From positions 1-30,061 of IMG/VR virus record IMGVR_UViG_3300014914_000026: DNA of 30,061 nucleotides; one strand, given 5' to 3'. A program made the position numbers and the translations under genes. Position 1 is the stretch's first letter. The number at the start of each line of letters is the position of its first letter. Of this stretch, positions 1 through 30,061 are shown piece by piece. Below the pieces are notes generated by a model. The model had not been told where the DNA came from. It worked only from the letters and a program-made list of their open reading frames with translations, and did not search any database.

Positions 1-123
1 AGCGGATCAGAATGCCTCAAAATACTCGGAGCCATAGACAGAATACTAAGCCTTTTTCCCACAAAGCCATAAGCACCCAACACCAAAAGGCTTAAATACA
101 CCAAACAACACAAAATTTTTTCG
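1..123. repeat. Left inverted terminal repeat (123 bp)
   Basis: Bases 1-123 are the exact reverse complement of 29939-30061; identity ends after ...caaaattttttcg. Confidence 0.97.
83..102 (+). promoter_or_regulatory. Archaeal BRE/TATA promoter inside the left ITR
   Basis: ccaaaaggCTTAAATAcacc with TATA at 92-98, about 37 nt before the ATG at 135; near-identical copy at 18493-18512. Confidence 0.7.
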
Positions 124-134
124 AGGGAAGGGTC

Positions 135-605
135 ATGGAGACGAGTGTGGAGGTAGTAGTTCGAGTGAAGATCAAGGATAAGGTGATGGAGCTTACACTA
201 AGCGAGGCTAAGAAGCTCAGAGATGAGCTATTGAAGATTATACCCCTCGAAGGGGAAAAAATAACCAGAATACCAAGAGCATTTCCAAGAGCGAGTCAAA
301 GTTGTGCTAATAAGCTCTTGGAGGTCATGGAGCCTGACAAGGAATACACGGCTGATGAACTAAAGGAGAAGGTGGGATACTGTAGAAGCGTAGTATATGC
401 TACTTTAAGGATGCTGACAAGCGAAGGTAAGATTAAGATAAGGCGTAAGGGGAATAGATTTTTGTATTCTTTGAGAACCCTTATTTTTTCTCCTGAGCAT
501 AATCTTGATAAGATAGGCTCCATAAATATGGAAGAGATGAGAAGTAAATATGAGGCTCTTAGGAGAGAGAAGGAGAAGGAGAGAATATTGAGGAGGGAGT
601 GGTGA
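135..605 (+). CDS. Winged-helix DNA-binding protein
   Basis: YTADELKEKVGYCRSVVYATLRMLTSEGKIKIRRKGNRFLYSL is an HTH-plus-wing pattern. Confidence 0.75.
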   Translation: METSVEVVVRVKIKDKVMELTLSEAKKLRDELLKIIPLEGEKITRIPRAFPRASQSCANKLLEVMEPDKEYTADELKEKVGYCRSVVYATLRMLTSEGKIKIRRKGNRFLYSLRTLIFSPEHNLDKIGSINMEEMRSKYEALRREKEKERILRREW

Positions 606-606
606 G

Positions 607-825
607 ATGGCTAAGCCTCTGAGGTTTGATGGTAGTGAGCCTGAGTGTTTTGGGTGTTGTGATTTGATGTCTATGGAGGAGTATAAGGCTAAGTGTGAGA
701 AGTGTCCTTATAGAGAGGACTGTGAGAGATGGTCTAATATACTTAGTGGTTCTATGATGCTTAATTTTGATGATGATTATACAGAGGAGGATGATGAATG
801 GTGGGACTGGGATGATGAAATATGA
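607..825 (+). CDS. Small Cys-rich protein with acidic C-terminus
   Basis: CFGCC...CEKC...C motif and D/E/W-rich tail; GGAG/GGTGA RBS; ATGA overlap with the next gene. Confidence 0.7.
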   Translation: MAKPLRFDGSEPECFGCCDLMSMEEYKAKCEKCPYREDCERWSNILSGSMMLNFDDDYTEEDDEWWDWDDEI

Positions 826-1193
826 AGGCTGAAATATATCTCGGTAAGTATCTCAGAGAGAATTGTTTAGGAGCATCTATGGATTTGAATCAGAGCAAGC
901 TGTTTGTTGTTTATCCTTATATAGGTTATTCAACTGATGAAAAAGTCGTGGAAAAAGGAGAAGACTACATAATATTGAGAATCAAAAGTATAGATAGCGT
1001 AGAGCCTGATAAAATTGTTTTAGGTATTGAGGATGATAATTTCTGGCCAGTAATCATTAGACTTAACCAAGATGAGGTTAAGAAGTTAATTAAGGCTTTA
1101 AATGATTGTCTTAAAGCTTTAGAGAAAGGAATAGAAAAATTAGAAGGTCAAATATATGTCAGAATAGGAGATAGTGGAGGTAATAAGGTATGA
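822..1193 (+). CDS. Hypothetical protein
   Basis: 123-aa ORF coupled by ATGA overlaps at both ends. Confidence 0.7.
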   Translation: MKAEIYLGKYLRENCLGASMDLNQSKLFVVYPYIGYSTDEKVVEKGEDYIILRIKSIDSVEPDKIVLGIEDDNFWPVIIRLNQDEVKKLIKALNDCLKALEKGIEKLEGQIYVRIGDSGGNKV

Positions 1194-1729
1194 TTAGAAA
1201 TTTAAAGAAGACTGTAAAGGATAAGTTATCTTCTATTATAATTTTCGTTAGGGGTGAAGAGGAAAAGAAAGGAGAGATTATTTTGAGGAAGGGGACTAAG
1301 ATAACATGCCCAAATTGTAGTGTTGTAATTGCTGTTGCTAAGAGAGATATAAGAAGTGGTGAAACTATTGATTCTGAGAATGTAAAATGGTTAATAAAGC
1401 AATTTAGAAGAGGTGATGAGTTGAGTTGTCCTTTGTGTTCTGCTCCAGTTGGATTAGATTTGGGATTTAAGAGTAAAGAAGGTGAGAAGGTATATGTTGG
1501 GTCTATTATACACACTTCTGAGGGATGGGTTCCAAAGCCTGTTTATGAATTGATGAAGAGTAAGGTTGATTCTGCTGTTAGGAGAAATATAAGAATATCG
1601 AGGAGGCATAGACCTCTTAGTAGTTTTAAGGGTAAGGGTTTGAGAAAGTTGGCAAGTAGAAGTAAGAGGACGAGGGTTTATGAGAGGAGGGCGGGTTTTG
1701 ATTGGAGGAAGAGGATTGAGGAGGATTAG
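1190..1729 (+). CDS. Zn-finger protein with basic C-terminal tail
   Basis: CPNC...CPLC pair; R/K-rich C-terminus. Confidence 0.7.
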   Translation: MIRNLKKTVKDKLSSIIIFVRGEEEKKGEIILRKGTKITCPNCSVVIAVAKRDIRSGETIDSENVKWLIKQFRRGDELSCPLCSAPVGLDLGFKSKEGEKVYVGSIIHTSEGWVPKPVYELMKSKVDSAVRRNIRISRRHRPLSSFKGKGLRKLASRSKRTRVYERRAGFDWRKRIEED

Positions 1730-1730
1730 C

Positions 1731-1807
1731 GGGTCAGTAGCTCAGTCAGGTAGAGCGTCGGGCTTTTAACCCGAAGGGCGGGGGTTCAAATCCCCCCTGA
1801 CCCGCCA
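1731..1807 (+). tRNA. trnK: tRNA-Lys (anticodon UUU), intron-less, CCA encoded
   Basis: Acceptor GGGTCAG/CTGACCC; D arm GCTC/GAGC; anticodon arm TCGGG-CTTTTAA-CCCGA (TTT at 1765-1767); T arm GGGGG-TTCAAAT-CCCCC; discriminator G then CCA. Confidence 0.95.
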
Positions 1808-1818
1808 AGGTGGTGGTA

Positions 1819-3619: not shown

Positions 3620-4327
3620 TTACATGCTTGTATAGTAGATTATATATACAGCTCCATCTCCTCCTTTCCCTCCATCACCACCACCTGCGTATAGGCTACC
3701 TCCTCCACCTCCACCTCCTGCTCCTGGAGATGAACCAGGTTCTCCTGATTCGCCTTTATCTCCTGTAACAGTCGATCCTCCATCTCCTCCAGATGCTATA
3801 TTGTTGGGTGTGTCAGCTCCTTTTCCTCCCTTGGTGTTCCCTGTTTCTCCTGAACTTCCAGATAGCATCGATATTTCTGAGTTTATAGCATATCCTGAAG
3901 GTGATCCTCCACCACCACCTGCTCCTGCTCCACCACTATTTGCTTTACCTCCTCCACCTCCTGAGCCTCCTCCTGCTGTAAGCCCAAAAGCAGTTGTATC
4001 TCCCCCTGCTGAACCTGGAGAGCCATTTTCATCTACAGCTCCTCCACTTCCTCCACTACCTCCTGCTCCTACTGTTATTGAATATGAAGAACCTGGAGTT
4101 ACTGGAATTCCTCTCGCTATTATAACCGCTCCTGAACCTCCTCCTCCACCACTACTTCCCGCAGATGAAGAACCTCCTCCACCTCCACCTCCTCCACCGC
4201 CTCCTCCAACTATTATTACATCGATTACATGAACGTCTTGTGGTGCTACCCATGTGTATGTTCCAGGTGTTGTAAAGGCATCTACCTTCTTTTTTATTGT
4301 AAACTTGATTGGATGTATTAGGCTCAT
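3620..4327 (-). CDS. Glycine-rich virion/tail-fibre-type protein
   Basis: FTTPGTYTWVAP...VIIVGGGGGGG...VTPGSSYSITVGAGG...GGDGAVYI matches the glycine-rich domain of phage tail proteins. Confidence 0.8.
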   Translation of the reverse strand: MSLIHPIKFTIKKKVDAFTTPGTYTWVAPQDVHVIDVIIVGGGGGGGGGGGGSSSAGSSGGGGGSGAVIIARGIPVTPGSSYSITVGAGGSGGSGGAVDENGSPGSAGGDTTAFGLTAGGGSGGGGGKANSGGAGAGGGGGSPSGYAINSEISMLSGSSGETGNTKGGKGADTPNNIASGGDGGSTVTGDKGESGEPGSSPGAGGGGGGGSLYAGGGDGGKGGDGAVYIIYYTSM

Positions 4328-4331
4328 ATTT

Positions 4332-4700
4332 TTATATCACCTCCATTACTTGTAGTATGAATAAGTATGGGAATGACCTTGGAGTTCCTGCTGTTTGAGT
4401 TATTGTTACTCTGAATTTTGCGTCGTAGGAGCATGTTATAGCAGGAATTCTGACTATAGGTATAGTTTGAGAGCCAGTAAATTTGAGTTCATCTGTTTTT
4501 CTTTGATTTGTTCCATCGACAGCAATATAGGTTCTTATTATAACTTCGTCTCCCTCTGCCATATTGCTTAGGTCTATTTGCCCCTCTATAATGTAGTCAT
4601 CAGACTGGTCTTCTAAGTTAATTATGTCTGTCTCCGTGTTAAGAGATTCTAAAGTAAGTGTTCCCTTGTATCTCTCTTTTCGTGCTATTCTAACTGGCAT
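4332..4700 (-). CDS. Putative beta-sandwich structural protein
   Basis: 122 aa with alternating beta-strand pattern; co-transcribed with fibre-type genes; GGTGG RBS. Confidence 0.55.
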   Translation of the reverse strand: MPVRIARKERYKGTLTLESLNTETDIINLEDQSDDYIIEGQIDLSNMAEGDEVIIRTYIAVDGTNQRKTDELKFTGSQTIPIVRIPAITCSYDAKFRVTITQTAGTPRSFPYLFILQVMEVI

Positions 4701-5367: not shown

Positions 5368-8300
5368 GTGGGTTGGCTTAGTGGATGGCAATATAGAAAA
5401 AGCCATGAAATAGAAGGCTCTACTGCTGGTGCGGTTACAGATTATCAGATAGGTATTAAAGTTTATAGAAGCACAGGGACAGATGGAACTGAAACAGAGA
5501 GTCTAATAACATGGGGTGTTGTATATGTTGGAACTAAATGTAGAGAAGATTTTGGAGACATAAGATTCACAGCAGATGATGGTGAAACCCTCTTAGACTA
5601 TTACATGGAGGAATATGAGTATGGTTCTTGGGCTAAATTCTGGGTGAAGATACCTTCTATACCTGCTAGTCCTGACTCTGTTACTATATATGTTTATTAT
5701 GGAAACTCTGATGCGACATATTCAGGAAGTGGAGAAGATACTTTCCAATTCTATGAAGATTTTGAAGATGGAACTTTGGGTTCTACACCTCCAGGCTGGA
5801 CTGTAGAAGGAAGTAGTGGAGACTATTTCCATGTGGATGACACTCATGTAAAGCAGGGTAGCAAAAGCGGTAAGTTACATGAAGATGGTGATGGAGAAGA
5901 ACTATCAGTTAAAGCTCATAAACATGAGACATCTACTGGTGGAGGAGCGGTTGTCCATGCCTGGATGATATTCAGCGGAGATAGGTCTGCCATAGCAGGA
6001 CTGGAACCTGGAGGATCAACCTCAGATTACTATGCCTCATACCTCCTATGTAGAGATGACAAAGACGACTGGAGACGTAACTCTGGTGGAACATTTTACA
6101 CGATTACAGAGTTCTCGGCTCCTTCAGACTTGGTGTGGTATAGACTGGAGATTTATCATCGCCCATCAGATGGTAAAGTTAAATATGTAAAGGATAGAAC
6201 CGAGGAATCAGATTGGGTTGATCCAAGAAGCTCTTGGAGTGAGATAGATGGAGTCCTTTTAAAAAGCCACTATAGGTATCCTGCTGACTCATGGTGGGAT
6301 CAAATCTATATTAGAAAGTATATAGACCCTGAGCCTAGTCATGGTTCCTGGGGAAGTGAGGAAACCTCTGGAGTATCTTATGTTCAGGAAATAACTGATG
6401 TAGGAAAAGTAGGAGATGCGTTATCAAGGGGAATAATTGATGTGGAAAAAGATTCGGGAAAGAGTGTAGATAGCTTAGTTCGTATTGTTGCTTTTCATAA
6501 AAGTGTTGTTGATATTGGTAAAGGTGTTGATAGTTTGAGTAAGTTTGTGGAATATTATAGAAGTTATATGGATGTGGGGAAAGGTTTAGATTCACTTAGT
6601 CTTACTGTTAATTATGTTAGGAGTTTTATTGATGTGAGTAAAGGATTAGATTACATTAGTATGTTTAGAGAAGTGTATAGAGATGTTATGGATAGAGTTT
6701 ATGGTGAGTTTTGGTTATCGACTTTTAGAGGAAAATCATTTTATGAAACTGTGAAAAGTGTTGATTTCATATCTAAGGATTATGATGGAAGACTAAGAGA
6801 TTCTGTTTTAGGTATAGATACTATTGGAAGAGATTTTGAGAAAGTCTATATTGATTATGGAATGGTCGCTGATTTTATCTCTAAAAGACCTCTTAAAAGT
6901 TTGGTTGATAGCTCTTTAGCTGTTGATTATTTTGAGAAGGTTGTAGAGTTTGTTAGAACGCTTTTTGATACTGGGGTTTCATCAGATTATCTTAAGAAGG
7001 AAATTGGAAAGTTAGCTAAAGATGTTGGAAAGACTGTTGATTATGTGGAGAAAACTCCAGCTAAGGTGTTAGTTGATACAAGTAGGATAATTGATTGGTA
7101 TAGTAAGTTTGCCTCTAAAATATTTTTCGATACATTTATTTCATTAGATTATCTTAGGAAAACTCCTGCTAAAAAGGTTGTTGATGTTGGGAAGGTTTCA
7201 GATTGGTATTGTAAGCTGGTTTCAGAATCCTTAATTGACACTTGTAAAGGTGTTGATTGGTATAGTAAAACTTCAACATTCTACAGAAGCTTTACAGATA
7301 TAGGCAAAACTGTAGATTACATAGAAAAAATGTCCATGAAGGCTCTCCTTGATATTGTTAAAAACATTGATTGGTTTACTAAGACTGCTATATTCTACAG
7401 GAACTTGTATGAGTTTGTAAATACCTCTGATTATTTAGCTAAAGATGTGCTTAGAAGTTTCCTTGATTATGCTGTTGGTGAGTTTTTGATTTCAAGTCTT
7501 CGTGGTAAGACCTTCAGGGAGACAATTAGAACTTTTGATTATCTATATAGAAACATTCTAAAAGTTTATGTTGATATTGGTAGAGCTTCTGATTACTTGA
7601 GAAAAGATAGAACCAAACCCATAAGTGATGTCTTTAAGGTTTTGGATTATGTTAAAAAGGAATCATTAAAATGTTTTGTTGATATAGGGAGGTCAGTTGA
7701 TTTCTTGTATAAAGAGTTCTTGAAAAGGACTTTTGATTCTGTGAGCGTTACTGATTGGTTTTTAAAGTTTGCTGTGAAGTTGTTTAGGGATGTTGTTTTA
7801 GGAAGGGATTGGTCTCTTAGAGATTCGCTTAAAGTCTTGTTGGAATTATGTAAAGGTTTAGACTATTTGAGTAGAGACACCACTAAGAGCTATTTGGATT
7901 ATAGTATATGTTCAGATTTTGTTTTGTTAGATATTGTGAAGTCCTTAGTTGAAGTTAGTAGAAGCTTTGACTATACCAGTAAAAGTATTCTTAGGAATTT
8001 CATTGATTATGCTTATGGTGAGCATTTCTTATCGACATTAAAGGGAAAGGAACTTAAAGATTATGTGAAAGTTTTTGATATTCTAAGTAGGGATTACTTG
8101 AAACTATTTTTTGACTTAATGAAGGGTGTTGATTTTATATATAAAGATTATGGCAAGAGGTTTGAGGAGTCCATTATAGGTGTAGATTTTGTTGAGAAAG
8201 GTTTTGGAATAAGACTTGAAGAGACAACAAAAGTGTATGAAAAAATTAATAGAGATATTTTGAAGAGCCTAATAGATTTGGGTAGGTCTCTTGAGCTATT

Positions 8301-8952
8301 TTACAAGGATGTGATTAAGAGTGTAATTGAGTATGTTAGTATATCAGATTACCTTAGTAAGGGTATTTCTAGAATTTTTGAGTTTGAAGCTCCTGTAGTT
8401 GGATATGTCTATCATATAAGAGGTAAGGGTTTCTATGAGACTGTAGGTGTTTCGGATAGAAGTATGATAGATGTAAACAAAAGATTTGTGGAATCTTTGA
8501 AACTTATTGAGAAAATGGCTAAGGATTATTCAACTTTGATAGATTTGGAAGTTTTGGGGAAAGGATTTACATCTAAGGATGTTACAAGTTCAATTATTGA
8601 GTTTGGAAGGGTATTAGAGCCTATTTTTAGTAGAGATATTTTAAGAGCTTTTAAGGAGTGGATTATTGTAAGAGATAAATACTGGAGAAAGATCATTGTT
8701 ACACTTGTAGATTATATACTGGATACTGGTGGAGTGGCAAGAGGTGTATCGAGACCTCTTAGGGATAAGGGTAAGGGAGTAGATGTTTTGACTAAAGTGG
8801 CTTATACGCTTGCTGGTCAAGATGTTAGAAGAGTTTACTGGCATAAGGTTTGGGGGGATATTATAGAGCCATCTGACCATAACTTAAATATAGAGGCTTG
8901 TAAAGTTATTCTTGAGGCGATGAAAAGAGTTAAAGATAAGTTGGGTGAATAG
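5368..8952 (+). CDS. Large adhesin/fibre protein: N-terminal DUF2341, lectin-like beta domain, long 18-20-aa repeat stalk
   Basis: WLSGWQYRK...DFGDIRFT..DG.TLLDY..E...FWVKIPSIPA...IYVYYGN is the DUF2341 pattern; aa ~335-1150 are D-x-G-K-x-x-D-(Y/W/F)-x-x-K repeats. Confidence 0.75.
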   Translation: MGWLSGWQYRKSHEIEGSTAGAVTDYQIGIKVYRSTGTDGTETESLITWGVVYVGTKCREDFGDIRFTADDGETLLDYYMEEYEYGSWAKFWVKIPSIPASPDSVTIYVYYGNSDATYSGSGEDTFQFYEDFEDGTLGSTPPGWTVEGSSGDYFHVDDTHVKQGSKSGKLHEDGDGEELSVKAHKHETSTGGGAVVHAWMIFSGDRSAIAGLEPGGSTSDYYASYLLCRDDKDDWRRNSGGTFYTITEFSAPSDLVWYRLEIYHRPSDGKVKYVKDRTEESDWVDPRSSWSEIDGVLLKSHYRYPADSWWDQIYIRKYIDPEPSHGSWGSEETSGVSYVQEITDVGKVGDALSRGIIDVEKDSGKSVDSLVRIVAFHKSVVDIGKGVDSLSKFVEYYRSYMDVGKGLDSLSLTVNYVRSFIDVSKGLDYISMFREVYRDVMDRVYGEFWLSTFRGKSFYETVKSVDFISKDYDGRLRDSVLGIDTIGRDFEKVYIDYGMVADFISKRPLKSLVDSSLAVDYFEKVVEFVRTLFDTGVSSDYLKKEIGKLAKDVGKTVDYVEKTPAKVLVDTSRIIDWYSKFASKIFFDTFISLDYLRKTPAKKVVDVGKVSDWYCKLVSESLIDTCKGVDWYSKTSTFYRSFTDIGKTVDYIEKMSMKALLDIVKNIDWFTKTAIFYRNLYEFVNTSDYLAKDVLRSFLDYAVGEFLISSLRGKTFRETIRTFDYLYRNILKVYVDIGRASDYLRKDRTKPISDVFKVLDYVKKESLKCFVDIGRSVDFLYKEFLKRTFDSVSVTDWFLKFAVKLFRDVVLGRDWSLRDSLKVLLELCKGLDYLSRDTTKSYLDYSICSDFVLLDIVKSLVEVSRSFDYTSKSILRNFIDYAYGEHFLSTLKGKELKDYVKVFDILSRDYLKLFFDLMKGVDFIYKDYGKRFEESIIGVDFVEKGFGIRLEETTKVYEKINRDILKSLIDLGRSLELFYKDVIKSVIEYVSISDYLSKGISRIFEFEAPVVGYVYHIRGKGFYETVGVSDRSMIDVNKRFVESLKLIEKMAKDYSTLIDLEVLGKGFTSKDVTSSIIEFGRVLEPIFSRDILRAFKEWIIVRDKYWRKIIVTLVDYILDTGGVARGVSRPLRDKGKGVDVLTKVAYTLAGQDVRRVYWHKVWGDIIEPSDHNLNIEACKVILEAMKRVKDKLGE

Positions 8953-8954: not shown

Positions 8955-9089
8955 ATGAAGGATTTAATTGCTAAGTTGATGTTGCTATATTTATATGCTA
9001 AACCAGAGGGAAGTCGAAGTTGGCTTCATTTAAAGTTTGGTGTTAAGAAGATATTAGAGGTGTTAGAGAAGGATGGGAAGCTTGAGTGA
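8955..9089 (+). CDS. Small hypothetical protein (44 aa, not in ORF track)
   Basis: MKDLIAKLMLLYLYAKPEGSRSWLHLKFGVKKILEVLEKDGKLE fills the gap between co-oriented genes; GGGTGA RBS. Confidence 0.5.
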   Translation: MKDLIAKLMLLYLYAKPEGSRSWLHLKFGVKKILEVLEKDGKLE

Positions 9090-9414
9090 AAAGATAAGCA
9101 ATCTGGAGGATTTGATTTCAAAGATGGAGTATGTAGAGGAAGGAGACTATGTATTTGCCAAGCATATTAATAATTTAAATGAAGCAAGTAAAATTGTTTT
9201 AGATTTCTGTAAGGAGGCTTATGATAAGTATAAGGAGAAGACTGGGGAGACTTTAGATGATGTAGAATTATGGCTTTATTTAGCTGAGAATAGAATTAAT
9301 ATGATGCGTTCTGTTAAGTATGGTGATATTGTTTTGACTAAAGATCATAACTTGATTATTGATAGTTTAAAGCCTTTGGAATTGGTTTTGAGAAGGCTTG
9401 AACAAAAACTTTAG
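9073..9414 (+). CDS. Helical protein with two GDxVxxxxxN motifs (putative fibre adaptor)
   Basis: EGDYVFAKHINNL and YGDIVLTKDHNLI resemble WGDIIEPSDHNLN at the end of the 1194-aa protein. Confidence 0.6.
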   Translation: MGSLSEKISNLEDLISKMEYVEEGDYVFAKHINNLNEASKIVLDFCKEAYDKYKEKTGETLDDVELWLYLAENRINMMRSVKYGDIVLTKDHNLIIDSLKPLELVLRRLEQKL

Positions 9415-10493
9415 AGGTATATTTTGACTACATCTCTTAATTTTTCACCTATTTTGTCCCAAGTTAAGTTGGGTCTTATGAATTTTTCTATGTGTTCCTT
9501 TACTTTTGCTTTGTATTCTTCATAATTGTTGAAGATTTCTATAGTTCTATCTACTGCTTTATCAATTATCATTTCAACCCCATATCCTATATGAATTGGA
9601 TTTGATGGTAAGACTTTATCGCTCTTTTTTGAGGGAATTAATGACCATTCAGGCATGTATTCCTCCCATGCTCCACCTTTTGCTCCTATTACTGGAACCC
9701 CTCTTGTTAGTGCTTCCATAGGTGGATGTTCCCACCCTCCTCCTCTTGATGTTAATGCGTATAGATCGCATAGATCGAAGAGTTCCATTTTTTGTTGTTC
9801 TGTAAGCCATCCAGATAATACTCTTCCTTCCATTTGGTATTTGGGTTTTCCTTTTTTGTATTCGATTGTTTCTGGGAAGTATCCTACAGCGTTTGCTGAT
9901 TTTACTACAAGTAGAACATTATTGTATTCTTTAAGTAGAGCTTGATAGTATCTTAGTAGTATGTCAAGTCCTTTCCTATATGGGCTATGAACTATGAAGC
10001 TTAGTATTAGTTTTAGGTTTCTTCGTTCCTTGAGTTTTGCTAAATGTTCAAATAGATTTGGAGGTTGTTTAGGGGCATCTATCCATTGTTCATCTATTCC
10101 ATGAGGTATTACATGAACTGGTTTTTTAACTCCTGATTTTATGTATGTTTCCTTAGATTTTTTGGATGGAACTATGAAGGCTTTTGCGTATTTAGTTAAT
10201 TTTACTGCGTATGGTGATAGTCTATCTGTATCTGCTACATCTACTCCTATTAATCCTGATGACCGACTAACTTTCTGTGCTAGTCTTTTTTCTAATTTTT
10301 GGAATAGGTAGAAGTATGGTTGTATTATTATTAGAGGTCTTGTGGTCATTGATATGTAAGGAAATGCTAGTTCATCTATTAGTTCTATTCTATAGTATTT
10401 TTTGAGTTGTTCATAATGTTTCATTCCAATTACATTAAAGCTAACTTTGTGATAAAAGGGAAACACATACCAAATTGATGTCGCTCTCATCAT
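9411..10493 (-). CDS. GT-B (GT4-like) glycosyltransferase
   Basis: IVPS..S, VIPHGID, RKGLDILL, SRGGGWEHPPMEALTRGVPVI. Confidence 0.9.
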   Translation of the reverse strand: MMRATSIWYVFPFYHKVSFNVIGMKHYEQLKKYYRIELIDELAFPYISMTTRPLIIIQPYFYLFQKLEKRLAQKVSRSSGLIGVDVADTDRLSPYAVKLTKYAKAFIVPSKKSKETYIKSGVKKPVHVIPHGIDEQWIDAPKQPPNLFEHLAKLKERRNLKLILSFIVHSPYRKGLDILLRYYQALLKEYNNVLLVVKSANAVGYFPETIEYKKGKPKYQMEGRVLSGWLTEQQKMELFDLCDLYALTSRGGGWEHPPMEALTRGVPVIGAKGGAWEEYMPEWSLIPSKKSDKVLPSNPIHIGYGVEMIIDKAVDRTIEIFNNYEEYKAKVKEHIEKFIRPNLTWDKIGEKLRDVVKIYL

Positions 10494-18512: not shown

Positions 18513-18543
18513 TTTGTGTATTGTTATAGATGGAGGTGGATGG

Positions 18544-19617: not shown

Positions 19618-19992
19618 TTAGTATGGCATCACCCAGCCTGCGATGACCTGTATAATCTCATCGCAGACTGAGGGATCGAGGCCATAGGCGTTCACATAGT
19701 AGCTCTTGAGACCAGAGCTGATCTTCTTGCCAGCATCACCCTTCTGGCGGACTATATGCCTCAGAAGGGCGAGGCCGAAGGCGAGGTAGGTCGCCCTCAT
19801 ACCACCAGTAATGCCATACTCATCGAGGATCGGCCTCACCAAGTCCCTGGCGGTGGCAACCATGTTTAGACCTTCCTGTGCTCTATCGACGGCGATGCTC
19901 TGGACATCCGTGAACCTAGTCCCTATGACGGTGGGGTTGAACTTTGCCTGATACTTCTTCCACATATCCAGACCAGTCTTATAGAGTGGCAT
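19618..19992 (-). CDS. Major capsid protein, SIRV2/Adnaviria fold
   Basis: KYQAKFNPTV...ILDEYGITGGMRATYLAFGL...GLKSYYVNAYGLDPSV..II.VI.G aligns by eye with rudivirus MCP (KWQAKF..NPTV...LTQYGITGPNRAIYQGFGL...GLKGYYISAFNANPQV); GGAGGTGA RBS. Confidence 0.92.
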   Translation of the reverse strand: MPLYKTGLDMWKKYQAKFNPTVIGTRFTDVQSIAVDRAQEGLNMVATARDLVRPILDEYGITGGMRATYLAFGLALLRHIVRQKGDAGKKISSGLKSYYVNAYGLDPSVCDEIIQVIAGWVMPY

Positions 19993-20070: not shown

Positions 20071-20670
20071 TTGAGGAGTGTGATGATGAAGCCTGAGGAT
20101 GAAATGGTTAAAATGAATGAATCTTCAAATACGCTTGAAACTCCAGATAAAGTTAGATTTGACAATATTAACATTCATAGTCTTGAAGATTGGATTGATT
20201 ACAGTATAAAGTGGAGGGCTTATAGGGATGTAGTGGATTATATACAGAGAGTTCTTGAGATTACTAATAGGTATTTTGAGTGGAGGATTCGTGAGGTTAT
20301 AAAGAATGGGATTATTGTTGATTATAATAGGTATGTGAAAGTTGATAGCTATAAGGTTACTTTAACTATTGAGGTCTGTATCCATGAGGATACTGTTGAG
20401 GAGTTGGCTAAGTTCTATAAGTTCCTTAAAAGTAGGATTGAAAGTCAGAGAAGACTTAAGAGAGGTAGGCTTAGAGGCTCTGAGTTCAAGTTTGTAGCTG
20501 ATGAGGAGATAGAGTCGCCTGTGGAGAGGGCTTTGAGGGAGAGTGAAGAGGAGCTTGATAGGGTGGAGGAGGAGGCTGAGGAAAAAACAGATAAGGGAAA
20601 TTGGTATAAGTTAATCCCAGTAGGGGAGTCTCATGGAGAGGAGAGAGACGCTTCCGAGGATGATGGTTAA
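20071..20670 (+). CDS. Hypothetical protein with acidic C-terminus
   Basis: About 195-aa ORF divergent from the MCP; start probably at one of the ATGs near 20083-20104. Confidence 0.65.
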   Translation: MRSVMMKPEDEMVKMNESSNTLETPDKVRFDNINIHSLEDWIDYSIKWRAYRDVVDYIQRVLEITNRYFEWRIREVIKNGIIVDYNRYVKVDSYKVTLTIEVCIHEDTVEELAKFYKFLKSRIESQRRLKRGRLRGSEFKFVADEEIESPVERALRESEEELDRVEEEAEEKTDKGNWYKLIPVGESHGEERDASEDDG

Positions 20671-20800
20671 TAGGCTTGAGATTGTTATTCCCAGTAGAAT
20701 CTGGGAGCGGTTAGAGAAGATTGAAAAGAAGGCTGGGATTAGGAAGGAAGATATTTTAATGAGGGCTTTAATCAAGGTTATAGAGGAGTTTGAGGGTTAG
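20633..20800 (+). CDS. Ribbon-helix-helix protein (55 aa, not in ORF track)
   Basis: RLEIVIPSRIWERLEKIEKKAGIRKEDILMRALIKVIEE is an RHH pattern. Confidence 0.7.
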   Translation: MERRETLPRMMVNRLEIVIPSRIWERLEKIEKKAGIRKEDILMRALIKVIEEFEG

Positions 20801-20802: not shown

Positions 20803-21114
20803 ATGAGCCTCCAGAGGAAGATTATGACTCTTATCGCTCCTATACCTGATCCGACTACAAGAATGGATGTAGCTTCCACTATAAATTATCTGTTTAGCGT
20901 CTATAATACTGGGGTAGTTAATGATGATGAAGTCAAGGATGCTTTATTTGAGGTTTGTAGGGATGTCTTGGAGGCTACTAATCCTGATTTAGGGATGGAG
21001 GAGATTAGGAAGAGAGCGGAGACTTTGGCTAAGGAATTTATGAGTGCTTTTAAGTTGGAGAGTTCTGTGCGGAGGATGATGAGTAGATTTAGGGGTAGAT
21101 TTATGCCTCTTTAG
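20803..21114 (+). CDS. Helical hypothetical protein
   Basis: 103-aa ORF 2 nt after the RHH stop. Confidence 0.7.
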   Translation: MSLQRKIMTLIAPIPDPTTRMDVASTINYLFSVYNTGVVNDDEVKDALFEVCRDVLEATNPDLGMEEIRKRAETLAKEFMSAFKLESSVRRMMSRFRGRFMPL

Positions 21115-21296: not shown

Positions 21297-21608
21297 TTAC
21301 ACCTCTATGAAGGTGTATCTTCCTTTTCTCTTTATAAATACTTTGGTTTTTACTGTGTATTGTCCCTTGAATTGGGCTAAGTCTTTGAATTTTTCTTTTA
21401 GTTTTGAGAGGTCTCTTGGAGCTTCCCTATAGCCCTTAACTTGGACTAACCAGATTTCTTTTGTATCTGGAAAGAAGGCAATGAGGTCTGCTGGGGTTCG
21501 ACTTCTTGAGCTTCTTATGACAAGGTTTGCTCCAAGTTTTTTAAGGTCGTCTTTGGCTCTTAGTTCTATTATGTATCCTTTTTGGTATGATGTTCTTTTT
21601 GGTGTCAT
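21297..21608 (-). CDS. hjc: Archaeal Holliday-junction resolvase (PD-(D/E)xK)
   Basis: KGY..E......L...G..VIRS..S..PADLIA......LVQVK. Confidence 0.85.
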   Translation of the reverse strand: MTPKRTSYQKGYIIELRAKDDLKKLGANLVIRSSRSRTPADLIAFFPDTKEIWLVQVKGYREAPRDLSKLKEKFKDLAQFKGQYTVKTKVFIKRKGRYTFIEV

Positions 21609-21609: not shown

Positions 21610-22077
21610 TTATCTTCCCTCTGTTCTTACGTATTTTACTGTGGCTATTCCAAGTGCTCCGAGGGTTCTCATTAGTATGTAGTATGCTAACTTTTGCTTG
21701 GTTTTGAGGTAGTATTTTGAGATGTAGATTTTTTGGTTGTGTAGGTCAAACCATATTGGTATTCTTCCTTTTGTTCTTGAGTATTTACATTTTCCGTGTT
21801 TGTCGTAGCGTGGTTGGGTTAGTATGTAGAGGATTTTGTTGCCTACTTTCTTTTTGCCTATGTAGAATTGTCTGTTGGGGAATCGCTTGTTTAGATTGTT
21901 TGCGTAGTTTATGAGGTCTTGGAGGGTTATTCTTTTGGAGTTTGGCTTGGGGACTAGTCTGAATATTTGGGTGTATCTACCCATTTGACCCTTTCCCTTG
22001 ATCTCTGGGGTGAAGTCAGCCCAGAGTTCGAGGAGGGTGATGCTTCGGTTCTTGCCGTAGGGGATTATCAGCACCAT
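21610..22077 (-). CDS. Basic hypothetical protein (possible nucleic-acid binding)
   Basis: 155 aa, K/R/Y-rich, own TATA at 22110-22121. Confidence 0.65.
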   Translation of the reverse strand: MVLIIPYGKNRSITLLELWADFTPEIKGKGQMGRYTQIFRLVPKPNSKRITLQDLINYANNLNKRFPNRQFYIGKKKVGNKILYILTQPRYDKHGKCKYSRTKGRIPIWFDLHNQKIYISKYYLKTKQKLAYYILMRTLGALGIATVKYVRTEGR

Positions 22078-22135: not shown

Positions 22136-22981
22136 CTAAAATGAGGGAATTAACTCAATCCACTCTGGCTCCTTATCGATGTAGTCTGGGAGAGCTTTGT
22201 AGAAGTCGAGGAGGGAGCATCCCCACCACCAGTTGTGGAATAGACCCTGATACCAGGGTCTTCCCTGTTTTATGTTGTTTAGGCAGAAGTAAAACCAATG
22301 GGTGGCTACTTGTTCTTTGAATTGCCTTAATGATATGGTTTTTGGGATGTATAACCAATGTGGTTCTGATAGAGCAAGCATGTAGTAATCTTTTGCCAGA
22401 TAGCTTTGGATTCTCTGTCTTGAGCCTTTTATTGGGAATCCTCTTTCTTCGTGATGTTCTATTACCATGATTGGTTTACATTTTTGGATTAGACCGTATG
22501 CTCCATATATGACGTTCTCTTCATGTCCTTCAACATCTATTTTTATTACATGACATTCGTCTATTAGGTCATCTAACCTCCAGACTGGGACTTCTATGGC
22601 TTCTTCTTTTTGGTCTGTTTTTACAAGGTGGCTTTGTGCTCCTTGTTGTATTAGGTAACCTGTTCCTGTGAAGTTTGATACTGCTGTTTCCATTATTTCT
22701 ATGTTTTCAATTTCATTTAGGGCTATGTTTAGTTTTAATACTGCTATGTTTGATGGGTCTGGTTCTATGGCTATGACTTCTTTATAGTATTTTGCCATTC
22801 TAATGGCATACATTCCATCACATGCTCCTACATCTACAAAGATTTTGTTTGGTGAGGCTACTTGTTTTAGTGTTTCTATTACTGTGAGTTCATGCGGTCT
22901 TAGGGGGTCGAGGTCTGAGGGGGTGGGATTATCTGTGGGTATAGCCCATTTAAATCCATCCCAGCTTTTACGGATTTTCAT
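22136..22981 (-). CDS. FkbM-family SAM methyltransferase
   Basis: FVDVGACDG, VIAIEPDP, RLDD, IKIDVEGHE..V..G, IEHH. Confidence 0.9.
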   Translation of the reverse strand: MKIRKSWDGFKWAIPTDNPTPSDLDPLRPHELTVIETLKQVASPNKIFVDVGACDGMYAIRMAKYYKEVIAIEPDPSNIAVLKLNIALNEIENIEIMETAVSNFTGTGYLIQQGAQSHLVKTDQKEEAIEVPVWRLDDLIDECHVIKIDVEGHEENVIYGAYGLIQKCKPIMVIEHHEERGFPIKGSRQRIQSYLAKDYYMLALSEPHWLYIPKTISLRQFKEQVATHWFYFCLNNIKQGRPWYQGLFHNWWWGCSLLDFYKALPDYIDKEPEWIELIPSF

Positions 22982-26390: not shown

Positions 26391-27008
26391 TTAGAGTTGA
26401 AAGGGTGCTAAGGCGTATATTCTGGTTCTTCTCCCACCCTTATGGGAGCTTGGTTTTGTTCTGACCAGTCGGACTAATTTCTTTTCGATTAGTTGATGAA
26501 TGATTCGATGGGCTGTTGAGTAGGGAATTCCAGTTTTATTGGAAATGTCCTCAATTGAGGCTTCTTTAAGCTCTATGAGGGTTTTTATAACTTTTCTAAT
26601 GTTTGGCCTGAAGAGGAGTTTGAAGACATAGGCTATGTCGCTTGGAGAGTATTTTTCAAAAATTAATAATAGGGTTGAGATTAGAGTTGGGTCGATTGGA
26701 CTGTATATGACATAGTTTTGTGGTTGCTCTCTGACATTTTTTATTGTCAGTTCAGTTGGGTAGTATTTATACTTCTCTCTATGACCAATTATGATTTTTT
26801 CTCTCCATAGTTCACCTTTCTCAACAAGGTAGTTTAGGACTCCTGAAAGTGTTGATTTGGTTACTCTGATTTTATTAATTTTTAATGCTGTCAGTATTTC
26901 GTTGAAGGTGCGTCCTTCCTTTCCCCAGTCTGAGGTCATTAAAGTTCTTATGGCATCTGATACTGTATTATTTGGAGAAATAATGGGGTATATGTTTTGT
27001 TCCTCCAT
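26391..27008 (-). CDS. Tandem double-wHTH transcription regulator
   Basis: RTFNEI...KSTLSGVLNYLVEKGEL and ASIEDISNKTGIPYSTAHRIIHQLIEKKLV...GGRRTRIY. Confidence 0.8.
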   Translation of the reverse strand: MEEQNIYPIISPNNTVSDAIRTLMTSDWGKEGRTFNEILTALKINKIRVTKSTLSGVLNYLVEKGELWREKIIIGHREKYKYYPTELTIKNVREQPQNYVIYSPIDPTLISTLLLIFEKYSPSDIAYVFKLLFRPNIRKVIKTLIELKEASIEDISNKTGIPYSTAHRIIHQLIEKKLVRLVRTKPSSHKGGRRTRIYALAPFQL

Positions 27009-27391: not shown

Positions 27392-27856
27392 TTATACACA
27401 CTTTCTCGCAATTCTGTAGGTCTCCAAGTCGTCGATTATAAGCTTCACACCATGATTGTTTAACCATTTGACAACTCTTAAAGATACTTCATGGGTGAGT
27501 TTCTTATCTTTTATTTCTTTATTCACTTCGTGAACTATTGTAGTCCATCTTACTCTCTTTTCAGGTATTCCTCTCCAATATGTAACTTTGACTTTCTTTA
27601 ATAATCTCTTCCCAATTTGAGCTATAAGGACTCTTAAGCCTCTCCTGTTCCAATCAATATATTCAACTAAAGATGTCTGCTCCTTAAACAACCCATGATT
27701 CTTTAGAAATTCTCTTATGGCTTTTAGAATTACATCTGTTCTACTGGTTTTATTAAGTTCAGCATAGTAATCCAAAGCAGAGATAAGATACAATTCTTCC
27801 AAAGGGACTTTAAATGTTATAACTCTCCAGCTATCATATTTCCTTGGGCGAGGCAT
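27392..27856 (-). CDS. RHH-domain regulator with extra C-terminal domain
   Basis: VITFKVPLEELYLISALDYYAELNKTSRTDVILKAIREFL; GAGGTGA RBS. Confidence 0.8.
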   Translation of the reverse strand: MPRPRKYDSWRVITFKVPLEELYLISALDYYAELNKTSRTDVILKAIREFLKNHGLFKEQTSLVEYIDWNRRGLRVLIAQIGKRLLKKVKVTYWRGIPEKRVRWTTIVHEVNKEIKDKKLTHEVSLRVVKWLNNHGVKLIIDDLETYRIARKCV

Positions 27857-28251: not shown

Positions 28252-28343
28252 CCCGCCACTTCCCTTTTTTTAGAGAGGTGTTAGGGGCTATAGGCGTAAG
28301 ACTTATATATGTGCTGTTCCCTAACACCTATTGGGTGATAAAA

Positions 28344-28766
28344 GTGGAAGAAGTGGTTGAGGCTCTTCCCCGACATTATGCTGTTTTGAGGAATAGGGTA
28401 ATAGAATCCCTAAATGAGGCCATAGAATCCCTAACACAGATAGACGCAGAGATGGAAAAGATAAACAAGCAAATTGAGGACTTGTCCTCCAACATCCGCT
28501 ACGGCTACCTCGAATACAAGTGGGTTCTAAACAAGATAAAGCAGAAGTATTGGTATTGGTATCTCAGAAAGAGGGAAAACGGAAAGCTAAGGAGCATCTA
28601 TATCGGCAAACACATCCCAAAACACCTAATAGAAGGAATAAACAACAGGAGACAACTAGAATCACTAGCAAAAAGGCTTGAAGAACTCGACGAAGAAAAA
28701 GAAAGAAAAATCCAGCATATATACAACGCTATAAGGGAGCTTCAAAAAGCTTCCATCACCCTCTAA
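28344..28766 (+). CDS. Coiled-coil protein with a three-stranded DNA-binding-like module
   Basis: GYLEYKWV...YWYWYLRKRENGKLRSIYIGK flanked by heptads; start reassigned to GTG 28344 (GGGTGA RBS, TATA at ~28303). Confidence 0.65.
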   Translation: MEEVVEALPRHYAVLRNRVIESLNEAIESLTQIDAEMEKINKQIEDLSSNIRYGYLEYKWVLNKIKQKYWYWYLRKRENGKLRSIYIGKHIPKHLIEGINNRRQLESLAKRLEELDEEKERKIQHIYNAIRELQKASITL

Positions 28767-28842
28767 TTTTTTAAACTCTCTTCTCTCAACCACAAAAAAT
28801 ATAAATAATTTCTCAAAAAACATTCAAGGGGTGGAAAAGGGG

Positions 28843-29085
28843 ATGTCCTATAACCTGGTTCCCGTAGATGGAATACCCAAGAGAAGAGTTCAGCGGAGAA
28901 GCAAGTATGACGACATCATCGACGACTTCCTAAACCAGAACCTAAAGTATGCCAGACTTGACATCGATGCCACCAACCTTGATTATATCAGAACACAGAT
29001 ATACAAGCGAATCAAGGCGAGAGGTCTAACCGACCACATTAAGATAGTTAGGAGAGGTAGTAACCTCTATCTGGTAAGACTTTAA
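28843..29085 (+). CDS. Small basic hypothetical protein (possible DNA binding)
   Basis: RSKYDDIIDDFL...YIRTQIYKRIKARGL...LYLVR; followed by a T-run. Confidence 0.65.
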   Translation: MSYNLVPVDGIPKRRVQRRSKYDDIIDDFLNQNLKYARLDIDATNLDYIRTQIYKRIKARGLTDHIKIVRRGSNLYLVRL

Positions 29086-29100
29086 AATCCCCAATTTTTT

Positions 29101-29412
29101 TTATGAAAAGAAGGGAAGTATATCTTCAGATAAATCTATCTCCAGGATTTTAATTAGCGGTATTATCATCCCCTCTCTTCTACCGAATTCATAGGCTGTT
29201 TTGATGATCCTGCCAGCATTAGCCTCCCCTATCACAGACAGCAACACTCCCTTATCAGTCTCTATGAATACCCAGCAACTAAGAATTCTCTGAGACAATA
29301 TAAATCTCTCATTCTCCTCGCTAAAGACTTTCTCGCCATCACTATGCCTAAAAGCCAAAATATACTCAACCAACTCTCTTACCTTCTCCTTTAAACTCTC
29401 TTCTGACATCAA
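29101..29412 (-). CDS. Hypothetical protein
   Basis: 103 aa; GGAGGTG RBS; coupled to the upstream gene. Confidence 0.65.
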   Translation of the reverse strand: MMSEESLKEKVRELVEYILAFRHSDGEKVFSEENERFILSQRILSCWVFIETDKGVLLSVIGEANAGRIIKTAYEFGRREGMIIPLIKILEIDLSEDILPFFS

Positions 29413-29774
29413 AGCACCTCCGCTAGTTCATCCACTATCCAGTATCCCTCAAACACTTTGAAATCCTCCTTTTTCAGTTTTTCTACAATATTCTCAAACA
29501 ATGATTTGATCTCATTCTGCTTCTTCTCGTCTGAATCGATAAAAATTCTTTGACCTAAATCTCTTTTCCACATTACTATGCTATCAGGAAAACCATCGTA
29601 TGTAGTATCCATAATTCCTGTAACTATCAGGAACTTATGTCCAATATAATGTCTATGTTCACCCTCTCCGTATGGAACACCCATGTTTATTATGCTTACA
29701 CCTACTGGATAGAACTTCTTAGCCAGCTTTATGAAATCCTCAAGTTTAAGAACTCTAAATACTGGCTGAATCAT
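29409..29774 (-). CDS. Hypothetical protein
   Basis: 121 aa; GAGGTGGGAGG RBS. Confidence 0.7.
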   Translation of the reverse strand: MIQPVFRVLKLEDFIKLAKKFYPVGVSIINMGVPYGEGEHRHYIGHKFLIVTGIMDTTYDGFPDSIVMWKRDLGQRIFIDSDEKKQNEIKSLFENIVEKLKKEDFKVFEGYWIVDELAEVL

Positions 29775-29929
29775 CCTCCCACCTCTTCACAGCCTTCAAT
29801 TAAATAATGGTAGTATATTGTTATATCATTTTTCTTCTCATCTTTCAGCATCTTCATTAAAGTTTTTACGATCCTACGGTATGGTAGTGGTCTATCGCTA
29901 GTTATATTAATTTCAAGCCTATATGCCAT
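29771..29929 (-). CDS. Small hypothetical protein (52 aa, not in ORF track), first gene from the right ITR promoter
   Basis: MAYRLEINITSDRPLPYRRIVKTLMKMLKDEKKNDITIYYHYLIEGCEEVGG; ATG 133 nt from the right end; ATGA overlap with the next gene. Confidence 0.65.
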   Translation of the reverse strand: MAYRLEINITSDRPLPYRRIVKTLMKMLKDEKKNDITIYYHYLIEGCEEVGG

Positions 29930-29938
29930 GTCTATCCC

Positions 29939-30061
29939 CGAAAAAATTTTGTGTTGTTTGGTGTATTTAAGCCTTTTGGTGTTGGGTGCTTATGGCTTTG
30001 TGGGAAAAAGGCTTAGTATTCTGTCTATGGCTCCGAGTATTTTGAGGCATTCTGATCCGCT
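29939..30061. repeat. Right inverted terminal repeat (123 bp)
   Basis: Exact reverse complement of 1-123. Confidence 0.97.

What the first reader, a model, noticed from the sequence alone, without database searches (positions are those of the whole stretch)
1..30061. Complete linear genome of a probably new lineage of rudivirus-like virus lacking recognisable replication genes
Seen: 123-bp ITRs, a single SIRV2-type MCP, two GT4s and Hjc. Known: rudiviruses have one MCP, whereas enveloped lipothrixviruses and tristromaviruses have two paralogues; SIRV2-like rudiviruses also carry an HUH Rep, an ssDNA-binding/ATPase/Cas4-like cluster and a pyramid egress protein. I recognise none of these here, and no polymerase, primase or helicase. 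Inference: a non-enveloped rod from a divergent family with a different replication and egress kit, probably on a non-Sulfolobales host. ORFs 28843-29085 and the N-terminus of 25238-25816 remind me of Bathyarchaeia proteins, which is tentative.
Basis: partly seen in the sequence, partly recalled or inferred. Interest (0 to 1): 0.8.

Follow-up and report, generated by a model that had tools for sequence, protein, structure and literature searches.

The report
Chiyouvirus-like archaeal rod virus genome
This is a nearly complete linear genome of a rod-shaped archaeal virus from Guaymas Basin sediment. It belongs to an already named but barely studied group (Chiyouviridae), so it is a new member rather than a new kind of virus, with two extras: a topoisomerase-like gene and a tRNA.

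Summary
The inverted terminal repeats (ITRs) are real: 123 nt exact here, and at least 141 nt in an independent assembly that adds 18 nt at each end. There is one SIRV2-type major capsid protein (MCP, 19618-19992 -) and two GT4 glycosyltransferases. A divergent Hjc-like resolvase (21297-21608 -) appears only with profile methods. No Rep, SSB/ATPase/Cas4 cluster, pyramid protein, polymerase, primase or helicase was found.

The "new family" reading is not supported. The MCP is 78% identical to that of Chiyouvirus 1 (Chiyouviridae, ICTV 2025) and 35-39% to Rudiviridae. Fourteen genes, including the whole structural module, are syntenic with Chiyouvirus at about 48% identity. The clade is large: at least 254 MCP clusters and 193 metagenome contigs. 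It overlaps a preprint's "Demeterviridae".

The window differs from Chiyouvirus:
- It keeps only the jelly-roll half of the second MCP-like gene.
- It has no Cas2 and no mini-CRISPR arrays.
- It carries a Mini-A (Topo VI-A/Spo11-like) gene between the MCP and GT4 genes.
- It carries a tRNA-Lys(UUU).

The arms are mostly orphan genes. The host is unresolved, and the Bathyarchaeia hint found no support. Verdict: probably a new genus within a known family; modest interest.

The parts
1..126 (.). Left inverted terminal repeat (123 nt exact; at least 18 nt more are missing from the window)
29936..30061 (.). Right inverted terminal repeat
1731..1807 (+). tRNA-Lys(UUU) with encoded CCA; found only in the window among the clade loci scanned
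   Evidence: ARAGORN; Rfam RF00005 78.9 bits; sequence
3620..4327 (-). Glycine-rich domain protein, tail-fibre-like; putative terminal or adhesion protein
   Evidence: PF21722 E 5.9e-18; tail-protein PHROGs E 1e-16
4332..4700 (-). Homologue of only the C-terminal domain of Chiyouvirus gene 23, which is an MCP-like N-terminal domain fused to a jelly-roll domain; the MCP-like half is absent here
   Evidence: 40% identity to residues 169-245 of gene 23; gene 23 N-terminus is MCP-like by hhalign, 96%; domain naming from PMC13700489
4711..5406 (-). Tail-fibre-like protein (homologue of Chiyouvirus gene 21)
   Evidence: phrog_5417 E 5e-20, phrog_4176 tail fibre
5368..8952 (+). 1194-aa DUF2341 protein with internal ~54-aa repeats; counterpart of SIRV2 ORF564
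   Evidence: PF10102 E 3.7e-21; SIRV2 ORF564 annotated as DUF2341; repeats
9073..9414 (+). 113-aa ORF; fused to the DUF2341 protein in relatives; weak match to SIRV2 ORF176
9411..10493 (-). GT4 glycosyltransferase (like SIRV2 ORF356/gp44)
10490..10828 (-). Clade-conserved 112-aa protein, function unknown
10990..15564 (-). 1524-aa terminal-fibre protein, homologue of SIRV2 P1070
   Evidence: E 7e-13 / 4e-12 to SIRV2 ORF1070; 41% to Chiyouvirus gene 18
15564..15839 (-). Clade-conserved 91-aa protein (homologue of Chiyouvirus gene 17)
16071..17387 (-). 438-aa conserved minor structural protein (homologue of Chiyouvirus gene 16; weakly like SIRV2 ORF488 and an SRV 464-aa protein)
17389..18435 (-). 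GT4 glycosyltransferase (like SIRV2 ORF335)
18514..19536 (+). Mini-A type IIB topoisomerase-like protein (5Y-CAP + Toprim; probable start at 18544). It sits on the opposite strand between the MCP and GT4 genes, which are adjacent in the Chiyouvirus-type contigs and in every relative whose coordinates were checked
   Evidence: phrog_6247 E 1.3e-49; phage 'DNA topoisomerase' genes and HCIV-1; invariant RxxFY, E, DxDxxG, VELDAL; fold matches Topo VI-A, prob 1.00
19618..19992 (-). Major capsid protein, SIRV2 type
20071..20670 (+). 199-aa acidic protein at the position where some relatives carry a second MCP paralogue; not MCP-like itself
20633..20800 (+). Small clade-universal protein (Chiyouvirus gene 12, annotated there as RHH)
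20803..21114 (+). Clade-universal 103-aa protein, function unknown
21297..21608 (-). Hjc-like PD-(D/E)xK nuclease (Holliday junction resolvase family) with an E15...D41...Q56-x-K58 motif
21610..22077 (-). Clade-conserved basic 155-aa protein, function unknown
22136..22981 (-). FkbM-type SAM methyltransferase (homologue of Chiyouvirus gene 9)
   Evidence: PF05050 E 1.2e-21
26391..27008 (-). Winged-helix (TrmB/MarR-type) DNA-binding protein
27392..27856 (-). Protein with an N-terminal ribbon-helix-helix domain (like SIRV2 ORF59b)

Best explanation
The window is the near-complete linear dsDNA genome of an uncultivated rod-shaped archaeal virus (realm Adnaviria, order Ligamenvirales). It belongs to the Chiyouvirus clade (family Chiyouviridae) and is probably a new genus. 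It was recovered from Guaymas Basin hydrothermal sediment. Shown: ITR termini; a central structural module collinear with Chiyouvirus (MCP, GT4, 438-aa minor structural protein, P1070-like fibre, second GT4); fibre-like and DUF2341 proteins; an Hjc-like nuclease; an FkbM methyltransferase; several RHH, wHTH and zinc-finger regulators; and arms made of orphan genes. Inferred mechanism: MCP homodimers wrap the DNA into a rod. The two glycosyltransferases glycosylate virion proteins. The P1070-like, DUF2341 and fibre-like proteins form terminal fibres that bind the host. With no polymerase, primase, helicase or HUH Rep, the genome must be copied by the host replisome, probably starting from hairpin or ITR ends as in rudiviruses. 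The Hjc-like nuclease would then cut the branched or head-to-head intermediates. Mini-A, which has a Spo11/Topo VI-A-type tyrosine and Toprim cleavage centre, is an accessory DNA-cleaving or topology enzyme; its patchy distribution argues against a core replication role. The tRNA-Lys(UUU) plausibly supports translation of this AAA-rich, 38% GC genome.
For: Identity and source: the window is IMGVR_UViG_3300014914_000026, deposited in GenBank as QMZE01000005.1, from a Guaymas Basin sample. Termini. Clade membership: MCP 78% to Chiyouvirus P0020 and 35-39% to Rudiviridae, with a 100/100 split in the tree. Fourteen of 49 ORFs are shared with Chiyouvirus at 33-78% identity, mean about 48%, in the same order. 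Only 5 ORFs match SIRV2 by BLASTP, at 26-36%. Clade size: at least 254 MCP clusters and 193 metagenome contigs. Core genes are defined across 93 loci. Hjc-like. Mini-A. No replication proteins. Mini-A occurs in only 2 other clade contigs. tRNA; AAA 495 codons against AAG 312.
Against: Only about 29% of ORFs are shared with Chiyouvirus, and no relative shares more than 17 of 49, so family-level placement rests mainly on the MCP and the structural module. The Chiyouvirus features stressed by its authors are missing here: a second MCP-like protein, Cas2 and mini-CRISPR arrays. The true termini, virion shape, replication mode and host are all inferred. About 25 ORFs have no detectable function, so a cryptic replication protein cannot be excluded. 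Only two structures could be predicted.
Confidence: 0.85

Rival explanations
1. The window represents a separate, new family of Ligamenvirales, sister to Chiyouviridae rather than a member of it.
For: Shared genes with Chiyouvirus are few (14 of 49) and average about 48% identity. Duan et al. used below 50% AAI between homologues as part of their argument for a separate family. It lacks the second MCP-like gene, Cas2 and the mini-arrays.
Against: MCP identity is 78% against 35-39% to the next family, and the two fall in one tight, strongly supported clade. The whole structural module is collinear. Variable arms are normal within archaeal virus families.
Confidence: 0.12
2. It is an enveloped, lipothrixvirus-like filament built from a heterodimer of two MCPs, the second being too divergent to detect by sequence.
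For: Duan et al. suggested an envelope for Chiyouvirus from two MCP-like genes and eight membrane proteins. Some clade members carry a true adjacent MCP2 paralogue. A few small ORFs have hydrophobic segments.
Against: No second MCP was found by HMM or profile-profile search. The ORF at the MCP2 position is unrelated. Only the jelly-roll half of the Chiyouvirus MCP-like gene is present. The 438-aa protein's model gave no MCP match.
Confidence: 0.08
3. It is not a virus genome but a chromosomal fragment, provirus or plasmid of the Archaeoglobales MAG in which GenBank files it.
For: It is deposited as QMZE01000005.1, 'MAG: Archaeoglobales archaeon B35_G2'.
Against: The ITRs sit exactly at both contig ends in two assemblies. 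It has a capsid and fibre module and no cellular genes. The same MAG holds three different viral contigs of this clade, and other clade contigs are binned into five or more unrelated archaeal lineages, which is typical of mis-binning.
Confidence: 0.02

Closest known systems
Chiyouvirus 1 (Wargodvirus xiongnu, Chiyouviridae; PP467602 = IMGVR_UViG_3300022544_000008)
   Same: Linear genome with terminal repeats, 27-30 kb. MCP 78% identical. Same gene order: methyltransferase, conserved small genes, MCP, GT4, 437-aa minor structural protein, 91-aa protein, about 1530-aa P1070-like fibre, 112-aa protein, GT4, fibre-like protein. Neither has Rep, polymerase or helicase.
   Different: The window has no Cas2 and no mini-CRISPR arrays. 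It has only the jelly-roll part of MCP-like gene 23. It has an Hjc-like gene for which BLASTP finds no counterpart in Chiyouvirus, a Mini-A gene inserted between MCP and GT4, and a tRNA-Lys. It comes from marine hydrothermal sediment rather than a hot spring. Both arms are unrelated.
"Demeterviridae" (bioRxiv 10.1101/2025.08.23.671958), e.g. IMGVR_UViG_3300008000_000001
   Same: That contig (L041) has an MCP 77% identical to the window's and 80% to Chiyouvirus's, and shares 12 core genes with the window.
   Different: It is assigned to Caldarchaeales by spacers. The family is described with multiple MCP copies, UbiG-like and ArsR-like genes, none of which were seen here. The proposed family appears to overlap Chiyouviridae.
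Rudiviridae (SIRV2)
   Same: SIRV2-type MCP, two GT4s, P1070 fibre, DUF2341 protein, Hjc-family resolvase, RHH regulators, ITRs.
   Different: MCP only 35-39% identical. No HUH Rep, ORF131b/ORF436/Cas4-like cluster, pyramid protein P98 or dUTPase. ITR at least 141 nt.
Mini-A type IIB topoisomerase-like proteins of phages and archaeal viruses (Takahashi et al. 2020, PMC7671362)
   Same: About 330 aa, 5Y-CAP + Toprim, RxxFY catalytic tyrosine, E + DxDxxG, ELDAL box, no B subunit nearby, virus-encoded.
   Different: The box reads VELDAL rather than WELDAL. I found no report of Mini-A in an adnavirus in the library searched.

Membership tests
Adnaviria / Ligamenvirales | SIRV2-type alpha-helical MCP | tested here: met
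   PF12193 E 2.4e-21; 35-40% identical to all Rudiviridae MCPs
Adnaviria / Ligamenvirales | Linear dsDNA genome with inverted terminal repeats | tested here: met
   (two independent assemblies)
Chiyouviridae | MCP groups with the exemplar Chiyouvirus 1 to the exclusion of other families | tested here: met
   78% identity; clade 100/100 against Rudiviridae 100/100. Ahmunviridae, Ungulaviridae and Lipothrixviridae MCPs were not in the tree
Chiyouviridae | Shared, collinear gene content with the exemplar | tested here: met
   14 ORFs, same order, 33-78% identity
Chiyouviridae | Second MCP-like protein (N-terminal MCP-like domain + C-terminal jelly-roll) | tested here: not met
   Only the C-terminal domain is present, at 4332-4700. 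The feature was described for the exemplar and is not a formal criterion
Chiyouviridae | Cas2-like gene and mini-CRISPR arrays | tested here: not met
   No arrays; no homologue of the Cas2 ORF by BLASTP. This is an accessory feature of the exemplar
Chiyouviridae | Bathyarchaeia host | tested here: inconclusive
   The one exemplar protospacer that could be compared, which lies in the MCP gene, has 12 of 35 mismatches in the window. ORF 25238-25816 has no named homologues. Bins are inconsistent
Rudiviridae | MCP within the Rudiviridae clade | tested here: not met
Rudiviridae | HUH Rep, ORF131b/ORF436/Cas4-like cluster, pyramid protein | tested here: not met
   phmmer with the SIRV2 proteins gives nothing below E 0.005 and no credible alignment; Pfam and PHROGs negative
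Lipothrixviridae / Tristromaviridae | Two paralogous MCPs | tested here: not met
"Samediviridae" | Core SSB, PCNA, MCM-like and AEP primase genes | tested here: not met
   None found in Pfam, PHROGs or NCBIfam; family description
Ahmunviridae | Relatedness to PBV300 (OP413840) | not testable with these tools
   The record is not in the collections
Mini-A (type IIB topoisomerase A-like) | Catalytic tyrosine in RxxY/FY | tested here: met
   R29, F32 (nearly invariant) and Y33 in the RTLFY motif across 33 homologues; R29 and Y33 are invariant
Mini-A (type IIB topoisomerase A-like) | Toprim metal site: E followed by DxDxxG | tested here: met
   E138, D193, D195 and G198 invariant
Mini-A (type IIB topoisomerase A-like) | C-terminal xWELDAL box | tested here: met
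   IVELDAL; V264, E265 and D267 invariant; V replaces W
Mini-A (type IIB topoisomerase A-like) | Topo VI-A fold, about 300 aa, no B subunit | tested here: met
   The top six PDB matches are all Topo VI-A, prob 1.00, 310-337 columns. No GHKL ATPase in the window
Archaeal Hjc (PF01870) | Significant match to the family | tested here: met
   The direct Pfam scan is negative. hhalign gives 95.4%, E 1.8e-8; the Hjc HMM hits it at E 1.2e-5; the best PDB hit is 1gef; 38 of 76 homologues match PF01870
Archaeal Hjc (PF01870) | Catalytic E...D...E-x-K | tested here: inconclusive
   E15, D41 and K58 are conserved, but the third acidic residue is Q56, invariant in the family. I recall a similar E/D/QxK site in TnsA; activity was not tested

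The most novel reading that the evidence does not exclude
In this virus and its sister contig, Mini-A (a Spo11/Topo VI-A-type tyrosine + Toprim enzyme) replaces the rudiviral HUH Rep. It would nick or cut the ITR or hairpin termini, or concatemer junctions, through a 5'-phosphotyrosyl link, working with the Q-variant Hjc-like nuclease. That would be a previously unseen way of starting or resolving replication of a linear hairpin genome, and a first assigned function for Mini-A.
Probability: 0.08. Interest if true: 0.7.

Novelty: new member of a known kind. Interest (0 to 1): 0.33.

Why it matters
The window adds a near-complete, ITR-bounded genome to Chiyouviridae, a family with a single classified species. 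It shows that the family sits within a large, diverse clade that dominates rod-virus signals in Guaymas-type hydrothermal sediments. It also shows that a preprint family name ("Demeterviridae") overlaps the ICTV family, and that GenBank carries this virus as part of an Archaeoglobales MAG. The clade as a whole lacks known replication initiators, so how these linear genomes replicate is an open question. The Mini-A and Hjc-like proteins are easy to test in vitro.

Tried and rejected
- Megablast of 25 kb against phage and archaeal virus genomes found no match.
- Chiyouvirus PP467602 and PBV300 OP413840 are not in the annotated collection. Chiyouvirus was instead recovered from metagenome contigs.
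- Second MCP: the ORF at the MCP2 position (20071-20670) is unrelated to MCPs. All ORFs tested by hhalign against the MCP profile were negative. The Chiyouvirus 433-aa gene 22 is not MCP-like (0.24%).
- The model of the 438-aa protein (pLDDT 74) gave no PDB match and only a weak match to an SRV protein. The MCP-like domain reported for its relatives could not be shown here.
- Hjc: a motif regex found nothing, SIRV2 ORF121 alone found nothing, and hhalign against that single sequence was weak. Detection needed a family profile.
- Profile or single-sequence searches of the PDB found nothing for Mini-A by sequence, ORFs 22982-23677, 2812-3603 and 21610-22077, or families A5 and A6.
- CRISPR mini-arrays: none.
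- "Samediviridae" membership was rejected on gene content.
- The gap between 5368-8952 and 9073-9414 holds many stops in that frame, so the two are not one ORF interrupted by a single stop.
- The ITR is not shared with any other fetched locus.
- Host inference from MAG bins was rejected as inconsistent.

Full report
**Observation**

The two ends of the window are inverted repeats: arms 1-126 and 29936-30061 are 99% complementary, and the first 123 nt are exact. The window is IMG/VR contig IMGVR_UViG_3300014914_000026. It comes from a Guaymas Basin subseafloor sediment metagenome (sample description in the supplement read).

An independent ENA/MEGAHIT assembly of 30,097 nt carries the same genes. 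Over the terminal 1.6 kb fetched at each end it is identical to the window, apart from 18 extra nt at each end. Those extra bases are also mutually inverted. The ITR is therefore real and at least 141 nt long. The window is near-complete rather than complete.

**Gene content**

A greedy ORF set gives 49 ORFs.
- The MCP is at 19618-19992(-): PF12193 E 2.4e-21 and 35-40% identity to every Rudiviridae MCP.
- The two GT4 glycosyltransferases are at 9411-10493(-) and 17389-18435(-). They correspond to SIRV2 ORF356 and ORF335.
- Other rudivirus-type structural genes are a 1524-aa P1070 homologue, a 1194-aa DUF2341 protein like SIRV2 ORF564, and a 438-aa conserved protein weakly like SIRV2 ORF488 and an SRV 464-aa protein.
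- Fibre-like proteins lie at 3620-4327 and 4711-5406.
- There is also an FkbM methyltransferase, several RHH, wHTH and zinc-finger proteins, and a tRNA-Lys(UUU) with encoded CCA.

**Hjc**

No library search found an Hjc, and neither did a motif regex. Aligning the clade homologues of ORF 21297-21608(-) exposed an Hjc-like pattern.
- The family profile's best PDB hit is P. furiosus Hjc (1gef), aligned over its full length, E 0.016.
- An Hjc profile was built from SIRV2 ORF121 plus five bona fide Hjc genes found in other clade contigs. It matches the family at 95.4%, E 1.8e-8, and picks only this ORF in the window, E 1.2e-5.
- The family profile finds 1,581 representatives in 1.84 billion proteins. 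Of 76 sampled, 38 match PF01870.
- The catalytic pattern is E15...D41...Q56-x-K58, with Q nearly invariant. From memory, TnsA has a comparable QxK site. Activity is untested.

**One MCP**

An MCP HMM hits only ORF 19618-19992 in the window. hhalign of every ORF or ORF family against the MCP alignment gives 5% or less for all others.

Chiyouvirus gene 23 does have an MCP-like N-terminal half (hhalign 96%, E 3.9e-9) fused to a C-terminal domain described elsewhere as a jelly-roll. The window's ORF 4332-4700 matches only that C-terminal domain. Some relatives (L009, L007) carry a true second MCP next to the first, but the window's ORF at that position is unrelated. The predicted structure of the 438-aa protein gave no MCP match.

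**Replication genes**

SIRV2 Rep, ORF131b, ORF436, Cas4-like ORF207, dUTPase and pyramid protein P98 have no homologue here. No polymerase, primase or helicase family was detected.

ORF 18514-19536(+) matches phrog_6247 'DNA topoisomerase' at E 1.3e-49. It also matches phage genes annotated as DNA topoisomerase and one in the archaeal virus HCIV-1. In an alignment of 33 homologues the Mini-A hallmarks are conserved: RxxFY, E, DxDxxG and an ELDAL box (features as defined in PMC7671362). Its model (pLDDT 82.8) matches only Topo VI-A structures at the top, prob 1.00.

This gene lies on the opposite strand between the MCP and GT4 genes. Those two genes are adjacent in the Chiyouvirus-type contigs and in the relatives whose coordinates were inspected. 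Among the clade loci it recurs only in the sister contig from the same sample (68% identity, at a different position) and distantly in one other. It is therefore an accessory gene.

**Relatives and classification**

The MCP has at least 254 clusters of 67-85% identical, 124-aa homologues and 193 metagenome contigs, largely from hydrothermal samples. One of them, P0020 (78% identical), is the MCP of Chiyouvirus 1. That virus is the exemplar of Chiyouviridae, proposed by Duan et al. 2024 and ratified by ICTV in 2025.

Fourteen window ORFs have Chiyouvirus homologues at 33-78% identity (mean about 48%) in the same order. Only five match SIRV2, at 26-36%. In an MCP tree, Rudiviridae (100/100) and the clade holding the window and Chiyouvirus (100/100) are cleanly separated.

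No fetched relative shares more than 17 of 49 ORFs with the window, and both arms are almost entirely orphan. I therefore place it as a new, probably genus-level lineage of a known family.

A contig that a 2025 preprint assigns to a new family 'Demeterviridae' (Caldarchaeales host) has an MCP 80% identical to Chiyouvirus's and 77% to the window's, so the two names overlap. 'Samediviridae' is excluded by its PCNA/MCM/primase core. Ahmunviridae could not be tested.

**Host**

GenBank holds the window as a contig of an Archaeoglobales MAG. That MAG contains three different viral contigs of this clade, and other clade contigs sit in Desulfurococcales, Aenigmatarchaeota, Thermoprotei, Culexarchaeia and other bins.

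The Chiyouvirus protospacer that lies in the MCP gene has 12 of 35 mismatches in the window. The host is unresolved. Published spacer-based hosts for clade members are Bathyarchaeia and Caldarchaeales.

**How it probably works**

What is shown is the gene complement and the termini. The rest is inferred from rudivirus biology.
- A rod is built from MCP homodimers around A-form DNA.
- The two GT4s glycosylate virion proteins.
- Terminal fibres are built from the P1070-like, DUF2341 and fibre-like proteins.
- Replication is done by the host replisome from ITR or hairpin ends.
- The Hjc-like nuclease resolves the intermediates.
- Mini-A acts as an optional DNA-cleavage or topology factor.
- The tRNA-Lys(UUU) matches the AAA-rich coding (495 AAA against 312 AAG codons).
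- The egress mechanism is unknown.

**Verdict**

Interest is modest. The Mini-A insertion, the Q-variant Hjc and the size of the unexplored hydrothermal clade are the points worth following.

Noticed in passing
window 1731-1807: A high-scoring tRNA-Lys(UUU) (Rfam 78.9 bits, 62% GC in a 38% GC genome) with an encoded CCA. None of the roughly 95 clade loci scanned has any tRNA, although their arms are only partly covered.
   Followed up: partly
window 18514-19536: The Mini-A topoisomerase-like gene sits on the opposite strand inside the conserved MCP-GT4 pair. The sister contig from the same sample carries a 68% identical copy at a contig end instead. I found no report of Mini-A in Adnaviria in the paper library.
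   Followed up: yes
window 21297-21608 and alignments A7, A8: The Hjc-like family has Q in place of the third catalytic acidic residue (E...D...QxK), conserved in at least 90% of 76 diverse homologues. Clade loci with a canonical Hjc (for example L052, L079, L069, L090) are not among the 17 loci holding long matches to this variant. A fuller comparison of the two distributions was not made.
   Followed up: partly
L041 (IMGVR_UViG_3300008000_000001): This contig is assigned to the proposed 'Demeterviridae' (Caldarchaeales) in a 2025 preprint, yet its MCP is 80% identical to that of Chiyouvirus 1. The proposed family appears to overlap ICTV Chiyouviridae, which did not turn up in that preprint in my full-text search.
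   Followed up: partly
L102, L103, L105 (GenBank QMZE01): The MAG 'Archaeoglobales archaeon B35_G2' contains at least three distinct viral contigs of this clade, including the window itself. This is probably mis-binning of viral contigs into a public MAG.
   Followed up: no
L103 / L111 (contig Ga0164311_10000589, 16.3 kb): One contig carries two MCP genes, 82% and 53% identical to the window's, about 13 kb apart. It is either a two-MCP virus or a chimeric assembly.
   Followed up: no
L009:6623-7207(-), L007:5033-5542(-): Some clade members have a true second MCP paralogue transcribed divergently next to MCP1 (E 1e-23 and 1e-16 to the MCP profile). The window, Chiyouvirus and the sister contig have an unrelated gene at that position.
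   Followed up: yes
window 5368-8952 and 9073-9414: The DUF2341 protein has internal repeats of about 162 nt (6962-7712). Its downstream 113-aa ORF is part of the same ORF in relatives L008 and L009, but here it is separated by many stops.
   Followed up: partly
Supplementary table of PMC10848311 (Chiyouvirus genes 22/23; Chiyouvirus2 genes 4/5): The 'SIRV2-like MCP' label sits on the 249-aa gene in one genome and on the 433-aa gene in the other. hhalign supports the 249-aa protein (96%) and not the 433-aa one (0.24%).
   Followed up: yes
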